A stretch of 63,582 nt of DNA, the filler included, from Octopus bimaculoides (taxonomy: Eukaryota), in the NCBI RefSeq assembly GCF_001194135.2. It is 7 parts of 7 records of this genome, joined end to end, with 100 filler letters (N's around TTAATTAATTAA, not from the genome) between each part and the next. Parts side by side here need not be neighbours in the genome. Positions count along the whole stretch, not along the records: positions 62,497 to 63,582 come from NC_068984.1; 6 more parts are not named here. One strand, 5' to 3'. Position 1 is the first letter of the stretch. Each line of letters opens with the position of its first letter. Below, one piece after another: positions 62,499-63,582 of the stretch. The position numbers were made by a program, and so were the translations under genes. A model generated the notes under the pieces. It saw nothing but the letters and a program-made list of their open reading frames with translations. It was not told the origin of the DNA and searched no databases.

Positions 62499-63581
62499 GC
62501 TCCTGAGGCAAAGCCTGTTGAGTCGCCCGAAGAGAAACCTGTGGAGGCTCCTGAGGTAAAACCTGTGGCGGCTCCTGAAGAGAAATCTGCAGAAGCTCCT
62601 GAGGTGAAACCTGTGGAGGCTCTTGAAGAGAAACTTGTGGAGGCTCATGAAGTGAAACCTGAGGAGGTTCCTGAGGAGAAACCTGTGGAGGCTCCTGAAG
62701 TGAAACCTGTGGAGGCTCCTGAGGTGAAACCTGTAGAGGTTCCTGAAGCAAAACCCGTGGAGGCTCTTGAAGAGAAACTTGTGGAGGCTCATGAAGTGAA
62801 ACCTGAGGAGGTTCCTGAGGAGAAACCTGTGGAGGTTCCTGAAGTGAAACCAGAGGAGGCTCCTGAGGTGAAACCTGTGGAGGCTCTTGAAGAGAAACTT
62901 GTAGAGGTTCTTGAGGAGAAACCTGTGGATGCTCCTGAAGAGAAACCGGTGGAGGCTCCTGAGGAGAAACTTGTGGAGGCTCCTGTGGGGAAACCTGTAG
63001 AGGCCCCTGAGGAGAAACTTGTAGAGGTTTCTGAAGAGAAAGCTGTGGAGGTTCTCGAAGAAAAACCTGTGGAGGCTCTGGAAGAGAAATCTGTGGGGCT
63101 TTCTGGTAAGAAAGCTGTGGTGGCTGCTGAAGAGAAACTGGTGGAGGCTCCTGAAGAGAAACCAGTTGAGGCTCCTGAGGCGTCTACTGAGGAGAAAACT
63201 GTGGAGGCTCCTGAGGAGAAGCCTGTGGAGGCTCCTGAGCTGAAACCTGTGGAGGCTCCTGAGCTGAAACCTGTGGAGGCTCCTGAGGTGAAACCTGTGG
63301 AGGCTCCTGAGGTGAAACCTATGGAGGATGCTGAAGCAAAACCTGTAGAGGCTCCTGAGGTGAAACCTGTGGAGGCTCCTGAAGAGAAACCTTTGGAGGC
63401 TCCTGAGGTGAAACCTGTGGAGGCTCTTGAAGAGAAACCAGTGGAGGCTCCTGAAGAGAAACCTGTGGAGGCTCCTGAGGTGAAACCTGTGGAGGCTCTT
63501 GAAGAGAAACCTGTGGAGGCTCCTGAAGTGAAACCTGTGGAGGCTCCTGAGGAGAAACTTGTGGAGGCTCCTGAAGTGAAA
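62499..63581 (+). CDS. Partial coding exon (open at both ends) of a protein with an 8-aa tandem repeat rich in Glu/Pro/Val/Lys/Ala (PEVK-like composition)
   Basis: Manual translation from 62499 (gct cct gag gca aag cct gtt gag tcg ccc gaa gag aaa cct gtg gag...) gives APEAKPVESPEEKPVEAPEVKPVAAPEEKSAEAPEVKPVEALEEKLVEAHEVKPEEVPEEKPVEAPEVKP... with no stop over 361 codons to the window end. The unit is 24 bp. Many differences between units are at third codon positions (cct/ccc/ccg/cca, gag/gaa, gtg/gta/gtt, aaa/aag). The one visible length irregularity (near 63180) is 12 bp and keeps the frame. The antisense QEPPQVS frame has TAG stops near 63185 and 63319. Confidence 0.72.
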
Positions 63582-63582
63582 T
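62499..63582 (+). repeat. 24-bp coding minisatellite, consensus GAG G(T/A)G AAA CCT GTG GAG GCT CCT, about 45 units
   Basis: The tandem periodicity is directly visible. A higher-order block (gaggctcttgaagagaaacttgtggaggctcatgaagtgaaacctgaggaggttcctgaggagaaacc) recurs at 62616 and 62760, 144 bp or 6 units apart. Confidence 0.95.

What the first reader, a model, noticed from the sequence alone, without database searches (positions are those of the whole stretch)
62499..63582. Unlisted 361-codon open frame encoding a PEVK-like 8-aa tandem repeat protein
Seen in the sequence: a stop-free frame to the window end, with about 45 units of E-[VE]-K-P-V-E-A-P. Third-position variation is frequent and the one visible length irregularity keeps the frame. 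The ORF track missed it, presumably because it has no in-window stop. Established knowledge: Pro/Glu/Val/Lys-rich repeats form the elastic PEVK segments of titin-family proteins, and acidic Glu/Lys repeat tails also occur in neurofilament and MAP1B/futsch-like proteins. Inference: this is a giant exon of a disordered or elastic cytoskeletal protein, possibly a cephalopod titin-like muscle protein. It has no KSP motifs, which argues against a classical neurofilament tail. The flanking domains are outside the window, so the gene cannot be named.
Basis: partly seen in the sequence, partly recalled or inferred. Interest (0 to 1): 0.7.

Follow-up and report, generated by a model that had tools for sequence, protein, structure and literature searches.

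The report
Octopus giant-exon acidic repeat protein
The piece is a real coding fragment, cut off on both sides by assembly gaps, from the middle of a giant exon (14 kb or more) of an uncharacterised, almost wholly disordered Octopus bimaculoides protein; its 8-residue Pro/Glu/Val/Lys repeat resembles titin's PEVK spring in composition only.

Summary
Window 62499-63581 (+) is a stop-free 361-codon frame made of about 45 copies of a 24-nt unit encoding A-P-E-[E/V]-K-P-V-E. It has one 12-nt in-frame insertion.

The piece is identical to Octopus bimaculoides chromosome CM046604.1 (GCA_001194135.2), locus L001:19520-20605. Runs of N (assembly gaps) bound it on both sides, which is why it has no start or stop. 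The same frame continues upstream through 2,490 open codons, mostly unique sequence, and through another 196-codon repeat island. It continues downstream for 724 codons. Every other + frame of these four segments stays open for at most 72-78 codons.

The 361 residues equal residues 2350-2710 of an older 3,371-aa gene model, P0165. The current NCBI annotation splits the ORF at the gaps into a 2,625-aa 3'-partial model and XP_052823634.1 ("pharyngeal muscle protein 2-like"). It uses only the last 46-62 codons of the piece.

The protein has no Pfam domain, no Ig/Fn3 or intermediate-filament rod domain, no PDB relative and no detectable homologue. It is acidic and predicted to be disordered, and it ends in a basic Ser/Lys-rich tail.

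So "giant exon of a disordered cephalopod protein" is right, and "titin-like" or "cytoskeletal" is unsupported. No transcript data could be consulted. Interest is modest.

The parts
62499..63581 (+). Internal coding segment (361 codons, no start or stop) of a giant exon. It encodes about 45 units of A-P-E-[E/V]-K-P-V-E and equals residues 2350-2710 of the 3,371-aa model P0165.
   Evidence: 100% identity to P0165; exact match to L001:19520-20605; same frame open upstream and downstream.
62497..63582 (.). The whole piece is one contig between two assembly gaps (N runs of 1307 and 1173 in CM046604.1). It is entirely a 24-nt tandem array, with 48- and 72-nt higher-order periodicity.
63183..63194 (+). 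12-nt (4-codon, 'STEE') insertion, the only register change in the array. It preserves the frame. The exact placement within about 12 nt is ambiguous.
62613..62835 (+). Recent internal 144-nt (6-unit) duplication. 62613-62691 is identical to 62757-62835 (79 nt exact at lag 144), giving the twice-seen block ALEEKLVE-AHEVKPEE-VPEEKPVE.
63396..63581 (+). The only part of the piece that lies in the CDS of the current NCBI model P0015 (its last 46-62 codons; the junction is ambiguous because of the repeat). The rest of the piece is treated there as intron or gap-bridging sequence.
63458..63582 (+). The last 125 nt are identical to L001:21844-21968 on the far side of the downstream gap. This is a possible redundant contig end or an overstated gap. 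The older model P0165 joins the two exactly here (…APEVK|SVEIPEEK…).

Best explanation
The piece is a gap-bounded internal fragment of a single very large coding exon of an uncharacterised Octopus bimaculoides gene on chromosome CM046604.1, at about 120.486-120.500 Mb. The exon spans at least 14 kb counting gaps and holds at least 3,771 sequenced codons.

Protein layout (shown):
- About 2,270 residues of unique, acidic, Ser/Glu/Lys-rich sequence. This part carries three copies of a roughly 50-residue helical motif with KRLS and RRGS sites, and older 14-residue KEE-x-KP-x-ETAP repeats.
- An array of at least 120 sequenced copies of the 8-residue unit APE[E/V]KPVE, interrupted by three assembly gaps. 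The array could be twice that length.
- About 260 acidic unique residues.
- A tail of about 225 residues that is basic (pI 11) and Ser/Lys-rich, with seven SPxK motifs.

Origin of the array (shown and inferred): it arose by recent DNA-level amplification of one founder unit through slippage or unequal exchange. Its codon usage and GC content differ from the rest of the exon, and 48-, 72- and 144-nt higher-order copies are visible. Selection has kept the frame open and the residue pattern roughly constant.

Mechanism (inferred, not shown): the segment does not fold. With about 17-20% Pro, about 30% Glu and a net charge of -0.18 per residue, it should behave as an extended, self-repelling, polyproline-II-rich chain. 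That would make it a long spacer or entropic spring or bristle, holding the N-terminal motif-bearing part away from the basic C-terminal tail. The tail is the likeliest anchoring end, binding a polyanionic partner such as microtubules, nucleic acid or acidic membrane. Array length, not exact sequence, would be the functional variable.
For: Identity and coding status (shown):
- Exact match of the piece to L001:19520-20605, with N runs on both sides.
- One + frame is open for 2490, 196, 361 and 724 codons across the four sequenced segments. Every other + frame reaches at most 72-78 codons.
- The piece translation is 100% identical to P0165 residues 2350-2710. P0015 and XP_052823634.1 are cluster mates from the same 147.8-Mb contig.
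- Array-wide, the sense frame has 0 stops and the lowest pN/pS, 0.47. Stops and synonymous changes differ from expectation in the direction coding predicts.
- The unit occurs only inside 16.9-22.4 kb of the 30.6-kb locus, and never on the other strand.

Recent amplification (shown):
- Lag identities of 78-90%, a 79-nt exact copy at lag 144, and codon usage and GC unlike the unique part of the exon.

Disorder (tool-based):
- AlphaFold2 mean pLDDT is 39.8, with no residue at 70 or above.
- The charge-hydropathy values fall on the disordered side for every region. The protein has no Trp, 1% Phe and 0.6% Tyr, and no hydrophobic segment.

Acidic body and basic tail.
Against: - Expression therefore rests on gene models and ORF statistics.
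- No orthologue was found, so conservation across species is untested.
- The codon-position pattern is not classical: second positions vary as much as third.
- pN/pS in two antisense frames (0.57-0.58) is not far from the sense value.
- The current NCBI model treats most of the piece as non-CDS.
- The spacer/spring mechanism and the anchoring role of the tail are inference from composition only.
- A possible splice acceptor at about L001 10052 means that undetected upstream exons, possibly encoding domains, cannot be excluded.
Confidence: 0.85

Rival explanations
1. It is a titin-type PEVK spring: the array is the elastic segment of a giant muscle protein whose Ig/Fn3 or kinase exons lie outside the 30-kb locus examined.
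For: P, E, V and K make up 78% of the residues, and local words such as PEEK, VEAP and PEVK recall titin's PEVK region (titin from general knowledge). A possible acceptor (tctttcag|) at about L001 10052 allows for upstream exons. NCBI's automatic name for the 3' model contains 'muscle'.
Against: There is no Pfam PPAK, Ig, Fn3 or kinase hit in any model or in the + strand ORF fragments scanned from the 10-kb flanks. The unit is 8 residues, not 26-28. Both gene models start and end around this exon. No homologue carries such domains. The automatic name rests on a low-complexity tail.
Confidence: 0.07
2. It is a non-coding minisatellite, as the current NCBI model implies by leaving the first roughly 900 nt of the piece out of its CDS, and the open frame is a by-product of a stop-free repeat unit.
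For: Any stop-free 24-nt unit gives a long open frame. An antisense frame is equally open. Second-position variation is as high as third. Codon usage differs from the rest of the exon.
Against: The array begins and ends inside one continuous ORF with thousands of unique codons in the same frame. All four sequenced islands keep that frame, with 0 stops against 81-149 codon pairs with stops in the other + frames. All length changes are multiples of 3. The model's 'intron' merely bridges an N gap.
Confidence: 0.04
3. The antisense strand is the coding one, giving for example a mucin- or FG-like (S-T-G-F-S-S-G-A)n protein.
For: That frame shares third positions with the sense frame. It shows a synonymous excess (50 against 32.8 expected) and only 2 stops in the piece.
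Against: It has stops in the piece and in other islands. There is no long antisense ORF continuing into the flanking unique sequence: minus-strand frames of the 16553-17377 and 21779-22600 segments, which include unique sequence, mostly carry 3-9 stops. Stops occur at the chance rate, 2 against 1.8 expected.
Confidence: 0.02

Closest known systems
PEVK region of titin and of invertebrate connectin/sallimus-type proteins
   Same: The composition is dominated by Pro, Glu, Val and Lys (78%). The region is tandemly repeated and predicted to be unfolded, so it is plausibly an entropic spring or spacer. It lies in a very large protein.
   Different: The unit is 8 residues rather than the 26-28-residue PPAK motif with poly-E segments. 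There is no Pfam PPAK hit, no Ig/Fn3/kinase domains and no sequence homology. The region is encoded in one giant exon rather than many small PEVK exons. Muscle expression is untested.
Projection domains and tails of structural MAPs and neurofilaments (MAP1B/futsch, MAP2/tau, NF-M/H)
   Same: A long acidic, repetitive, disordered 'side-arm' is combined with a basic Ser/Pro/Lys-rich region (seven SPxK motifs in the C-terminal 225 residues). Coding is by a giant exon, as in futsch.
   Different: There is no MAP1 N-terminal or light-chain domain, no tau/MAP2 tubulin-binding repeat, no intermediate-filament rod and no KSP in the array. None of the corresponding Pfam families is hit. The resemblance is architectural only.
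Compositional look-alikes returned by the searches: salmonid 'fibrous sheath CABYR-binding protein-like'/'calphotin-like', Xenopus 'neurofilament heavy polypeptide-like', and Bacillus S-layer-homology cell-surface proteins with PEVKPEEKP linkers
   Same: Short Pro/Glu/Val/Lys-rich tandem units (for example EEVPVEAP, EEKPVEKP, PEVKPEEKP) serve as low-complexity linkers.
   Different: The unit sequences and lengths differ, the flanking domains are unrelated, and the organisms range from bacteria to vertebrates. These are convergent low-complexity matches, not homologues.
The gene's own database models: P0165 (3,371 aa, EukProt/MetaClust), P0015 (2,625 aa, NCBI) and XP_052823634.1 'pharyngeal muscle protein 2-like' (659 aa)
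   Same: They come from the same locus. P0165 contains the piece's 361 residues exactly.
   Different: All three are incomplete or split at assembly gaps. None contains every sequenced island. The NCBI name is an automatic, low-complexity-driven label.

Membership tests
Titin PEVK / PPAK repeat (titin-family elastic segment) | 26-28-residue PPAK-type repeats (Pfam PPAK model), with or without poly-E segments | tested here: not met
   Pfam scans of the piece at E<=1 and of the full models P0015, P0164 and P0165 give 0 families. The unit is 8 residues.
Titin PEVK / PPAK repeat (titin-family elastic segment) | Embedded between Ig and/or Fn3 domains, with or without a kinase, of the same polypeptide | tested here: not met
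   No Ig/Fn3/kinase hit in any model. No Pfam hit in the + strand ORF fragments scanned within 10 kb either side. More distant exons cannot be excluded.
Titin PEVK / PPAK repeat (titin-family elastic segment) | Expressed in muscle sarcomeres and behaves as an entropic spring | not testable with these tools
No expression or biophysical data are available.
Neurofilament M/H tail | Intermediate-filament rod domain upstream, and KSP phosphorylation repeats in the tail | tested here: not met
   No Pfam filament domain. There is no KSP in the array (translation). SPxK motifs occur only in the separate C-terminal basic tail.
MAP1B/futsch or MAP2/tau structural MAPs | MAP1 N-terminal or light-chain domains, or tubulin-binding repeats | tested here: not met
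   No Pfam family hit in 3,371 aa. No PDB relative for the N- or C-terminal unique regions.
Tandem-repeat intrinsically disordered region (acidic, proline-rich polyelectrolyte) | Low-complexity repeat, high net charge with low hydropathy, depleted in aromatic residues, and no confident predicted structure | tested here: met
   Net charge -0.18 per residue, Pro 17%, Glu 30%, on the disordered side of the Uversky boundary. Trp 0%, Phe 1.0%, Tyr 0.6%. AF2 mean pLDDT 39.8, with 323 of 361 residues below 50 (single-sequence prediction, so weak on its own).
Protein-coding exon (as opposed to a satellite) | Frame continuity with flanking unique coding sequence, indels in multiples of 3, and stop avoidance | tested here: met
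Protein-coding exon (as opposed to a satellite) | Transcribed on the + strand, and the frame conserved in related species | not testable with these tools
No orthologue was retrieved. No cephalopod genome collection was available to scan.

The most novel reading that the evidence does not exclude
The gene encodes a cephalopod-restricted (possibly octopus-restricted) giant elastic or spacer protein. In this reading it has evolved a PEVK-like spring independently of titin, from a recently amplified 8-residue unit. The spring is regulated through three PKA-type helical motifs and anchored by a basic SPxK-rich tail, and array length is polymorphic and functionally tuned, for example in obliquely striated muscle or in axons.
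Probability: 0.1. Interest if true: 0.6.

Novelty: new member of a known kind. Interest (0 to 1): 0.3.

Why it matters
As biology, it adds one more example of a lineage-restricted, giant-exon, tandem-repeat disordered protein, with a PEVK-like composition that evolved independently of titin. If it is expressed in muscle or neurons, it would be a useful natural model for how entropic spacers arise by recent repeat amplification.

The practical value is annotational. The current chromosome-scale octopus annotation splits one ORF of at least 3,771 codons into two gene models at assembly gaps. It leaves about 900 nt of clearly coding repeat out of the CDS and gives the 3' half a misleading automatic name. 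The array length is unresolved: 2,723 N lie within it, and one gap is probably partly spurious. Protein length and any copy-number polymorphism therefore remain unknown.

Tried and rejected
No RNA or read evidence was obtained.
- Pfam on the piece, the three models and the flank fragments gave nothing. NCBIfam gave nothing. Rfam on both strands gave nothing.
- PDB sequence search with the piece gave only two weak low-complexity matches, a uL4 tail and OCM3. The N-terminal 2,269 aa and the C-terminal 506 aa gave nothing.
- The word-indexed protein search with the piece returned only compositional hits and missed the gene's own model. With the 2,269-aa unique N-terminus it returned only the gene itself. 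With a 3-copy alignment of the 50-aa motif it returned nothing.
- The exhaustive HMMER search found the true locus as top hit (P0015, E 5e-87). All the other inspected hits (P0016, P0021, P0025, P0057, P0073, P0083, P0112, P0117, P0139, P0152) are unrelated low-complexity proteins.
- Exact DNA pattern scans of the metagenome, bacterial/archaeal genome and viral contig collections gave 0 matches.
- Literature searches for the peptide strings and for 'pharyngeal muscle protein 2' gave 0 papers. 'PEVK'+'cephalopod' and 'Octopus bimaculoides'+'intrinsically disordered'+'tandem repeat' each gave one irrelevant paper.
- CpG depletion (7 against 70 expected) was considered and dismissed as uninformative, because the consensus unit contains no CG.
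- The antisense open frame (LHRFLFRS)n was rejected. Its consensus cannot mutate to a stop in one step, and its pN/pS is 2.5.

Full report
**1. What is in the piece**

Window 62497-63582 (1,086 nt) is wholly a tandem array with a 24-nt period. Periods of 48 and 72 nt score as well or better, and matches run at 78-88%.

The + frame starting at 62499 has no stop in 361 codons, while the other two + frames have 22 and 46 stops. In 8-codon units the consensus is GCT CCT GAA GAG AAA CCT GTG GAG = A-P-E-E-K-P-V-E. The fourth residue is dimorphic (E in 23 units, V in 16), which produces the 16-residue super-period. One 12-nt insertion (TCTACTGAGGAG, about 63183-63194) shifts the register by half a unit and keeps the frame. 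A 79-nt exact copy at lag 144 (62613-62691 = 62757-62835) shows a recent 6-unit duplication.

**2. Is the open frame more than chance?**

Taken alone, only moderately.
- A stop-free repeat unit automatically gives a long ORF. One antisense frame, (LHRFLFRS)n, is equally open, and the other two antisense frames have just 2 stops each.
- Differences from the consensus fall 16/56/50 on codon positions 1/2/3. The "frequent third-position variation" is real, but second positions vary just as much: E/V, P→L and A→V.
- I spread the observed substitution spectrum over all matching consensus sites. The sense frame then shows 0 stops against 4.6 expected and 48 synonymous changes against 24.9 expected.
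- The antisense frame that shares its third positions, (STGFSSGA)n, shows a weaker excess (50 against 32.8) and stops at the chance rate (2 against 1.8). The fully open antisense frame has no one-step path to a stop, and synonymous changes are depleted in it (11 against 27.3).

**3. Where it comes from**

The word-indexed protein search returned only compositional look-alikes. The exhaustive HMMER search found one outstanding hit, P0015 (2,625 aa, E 5e-87).

Its 90% cluster also holds XP_052823634.1, "pharyngeal muscle protein 2-like [Octopus bimaculoides]" (659 aa), and a 3,371-aa EukProt/MetaClust model, P0165. The 361 residues of the piece are 100% identical to P0165 residues 2350-2710.

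Looking up P0015 gave locus L001 = GCA_001194135.2 CM046604.1:120475954-120506557. The piece matches L001:19520-20605 exactly. It is bounded by N runs of 1,307 nt (18213-19519) and 1,173 nt (20606-21778). The piece is therefore a contig island between two assembly gaps, which is why it has neither start nor stop and why an ORF lister skipped it.

**4. Gene context**

A single + frame is open over these four segments:

| L001 range | Open codons | Limits |
|---|---|---|
| 9908-17377 | 2,490 | runs into a 243-N gap |
| 17623-18210 | 196 | gap to gap |
| 19522-20604 | 361 | the piece, gap to gap |
| 21779-23950 | 724 | ends at AAAAG\|GTTGA |

- No other + frame in these segments exceeds 72-78 codons.
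- The first roughly 2,320 codons are unique, non-repetitive sequence. An ORF of that length in a locus whose non-coding flanks are 28-33% GC cannot be chance. The array starts inside this ORF in the same frame.
- The end at 23950 can be read as a splice donor, as in XP_052823634.1, which adds 21 residues from a downstream exon. It can also be read as Gly-stop, as in P0165.
- The 24-nt array occupies 16869-17378, 17622-18212, 19520-20605 and 21779-22491. That is about 120 sequenced units plus 2,723 N. The unit occurs nowhere else in the 30.6-kb locus and never on the minus strand.
- Over all islands the sense frame has no stops and the lowest pN/pS (0.47). The other frames give 0.57-2.5 and carry 2-149 codon pairs with stops.

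**5. Annotation state**

- P0165 uses the whole piece but jumps over the second island and over parts of the first and fourth segments.
- P0015 is identical to P0165 for 2,352 residues. It then uses the second island (17623-18213), and after that only the last 46-62 codons of the piece. It stops without a stop codon exactly at the gap.
- XP_052823634.1 starts at the first Met after the next gap.
- One ORF of at least 3,771 codons is thus currently represented by two partial models, and about 900 nt of the piece is not annotated as CDS.
- The last 125 nt of the piece are identical to L001:21844-21968 across the gap, and the preceding 65 nt differ at 8 sites. That gap may therefore be partly an assembly artefact.
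- A polypyrimidine-AG (tctttcag|) at about L001 10052 leaves room for undetected upstream exons.

**6. What kind of protein**

- None of the models hits any Pfam or NCBIfam family.
- Neither the N-terminal 2,269 aa nor the C-terminal 506 aa has a PDB relative.
- + strand ORF fragments in the flanks look like microsatellite-rich non-coding DNA and have no Pfam hit.
- The unique N-terminus retrieves only itself.
- Composition of the piece: E 30%, P 17%, V 17%, K 13%, A 12% (PEVK 78%), pI 4.3, net charge -0.18 per residue.
- Every region lies on the disordered side of the charge-hydropathy boundary.
- The whole protein has no Trp, 1.0% Phe and 0.6% Tyr. Its highest 19-residue hydropathy is 0.86, so there is no signal peptide or membrane segment.
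- AlphaFold2 on the piece, run as a single sequence, gives mean pLDDT 39.8 and pTM 0.14.
- The last roughly 225 residues reverse polarity: pI 11.0, S 25%, K 19%, with seven SPxK motifs.
- Three copies of a roughly 50-residue motif (…YL[G/E]KRLSLVEF[M/I]xExP…R[R/S]GSII…) sit in the acidic N-terminal part. AF2 predicts them as a helix-kink-helix at pLDDT 71-81. No other protein in the database shares the motif.
- A 14-residue repeat, PAETAPTVVKEEVK ×5 (L001 12725-12933), looks like a longer, older cousin of the 8-residue unit.

**7. How it most likely works**

Shown:
- The sequence is a coding array that keeps its frame.
- The array was amplified recently. Unit identity is 78-90% at the DNA level and higher-order copies are visible.
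- Codon usage looks inherited unchanged from the founder unit. GAG is 77%, GTG 76% and CCT 90% in the array, against GAA 72% and GTT+GTA 75% in the unique part. GC is 53% against 38%.

Inferred:
- The array is an unfolded, proline-stiffened, strongly acidic chain. It would act as a long spacer or entropic spring or bristle between the motif-bearing N-terminal part and the basic tail. The tail is the likeliest attachment end.
- Selection would act on length, charge and proline spacing rather than exact sequence. That would fit a pN/pS near 0.5 and tolerated P→L, A→V and E↔V changes.

This is how titin's PEVK region and MAP/neurofilament side-arms are thought to work (general knowledge). It is a functional analogy and does not place the protein in those families.

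**8. Comparison with known families**

The titin PEVK tests fail: no PPAK repeat, no flanking Ig/Fn3. So do the neurofilament tests (no rod domain, no KSP) and the MAP1/MAP2/tau tests (no defining domains). The FSCB-like, calphotin-like and NF-H-like hits and the bacterial SLH-protein hits are convergent low-complexity matches. NCBI's "pharyngeal muscle protein 2-like" is an automatic label on the low-complexity 3' half and is not evidence of function.

**9. Verdict**

"Giant exon", "disordered" and "cephalopod" hold. "Titin-like" and "cytoskeletal" are unsupported.
- The feature is a new, uncharacterised member of a known kind: a tandem-repeat disordered protein encoded by a giant exon. It is already present in databases as incomplete gene models.
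- Interest is modest, at 0.3.

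Noticed in passing
window 63458-63582 (= L001:20481-20605) versus L001:21844-21968: The last 125 nt of the piece are identical to sequence just beyond the 1,173-N downstream gap, while the preceding 65 nt differ at 8 sites. The gap may be partly spurious (redundant contig ends), or the array may hold a very recent duplicate.
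   Followed up: partly
L001:10001-20604 and L001:22034-30604+: The current NCBI annotation splits one continuous ORF into two gene models at assembly gaps: a 2,625-aa 3'-partial model and XP_052823634.1 'pharyngeal muscle protein 2-like'. It omits about 900 nt of the piece from the CDS. The older 3,371-aa model includes the piece but skips another island (17623-18210).
   Followed up: yes
P0165 residues ~650-705, ~955-1005 and ~2135-2190 (L001 ~12020, ~12930, ~16470): A roughly 50-residue motif occurs three times: …DSQ…YL(G/E)KRLSLVEF(M/I)xExP…R(R/S)GSII…. It carries KRLS and RRGS sites of PKA-consensus type. AF2 predicts a helix-kink-helix at pLDDT 71-81. No other protein in the searched database shares it. 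It may be a regulated binding module.
   Followed up: partly
L001:12725-12933: A 42-nt (14-residue) tandem repeat, PAETAPTVVKEEVK ×5, lies in the unique part of the exon. Its core (EE-V-KP-A-E-T-AP) resembles the 8-residue unit (EE-KP-V-E-AP). This suggests the large array derives from an older repeat family within the same gene.
   Followed up: no
L001:~23270-23947 (the C-terminal ~225 residues of the ORF): The tail is strongly basic (pI 11), Ser 25% and Lys 19%, with seven SPxK motifs. It is opposite in charge to the 3,000+ acidic residues before it. The acidic body plus basic tail recalls the layout of MAPs or histone H1 tails.
   Followed up: partly
L001:19520-20605 versus L001:10070-16867: Codon usage and GC of the array (GAG 77%, GTG 76%, CCT 90%; GC 53%) differ sharply from the unique part of the same exon (GAA 72%, GTT+GTA 75%; GC 38%). 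This is what a recently amplified founder unit would show.
   Followed up: yes
L001:~10030-10070: A polypyrimidine tract plus AG (cctctttcag|ATACACATGG) lies just upstream of the Met used by the older model. It is a candidate splice acceptor, so upstream exons may be missing from both models.
   Followed up: no
L001:4575-5550, 26180-26460 and 29990-30300: The gene's flanks are rich in TA/CA-type microsatellites and are AT-rich (GC 28-33%). These create spurious ORFs of 100-140 codons made of Y/I/C/V/H/T.
   Followed up: no
tools: With the repeat as query, the word-indexed protein search failed to return the gene's own model. It also returned nothing for the motif alignment that this model contains three times. 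The exhaustive HMMER search found the model at once. Low-complexity queries evidently defeat the word index.
   Followed up: no
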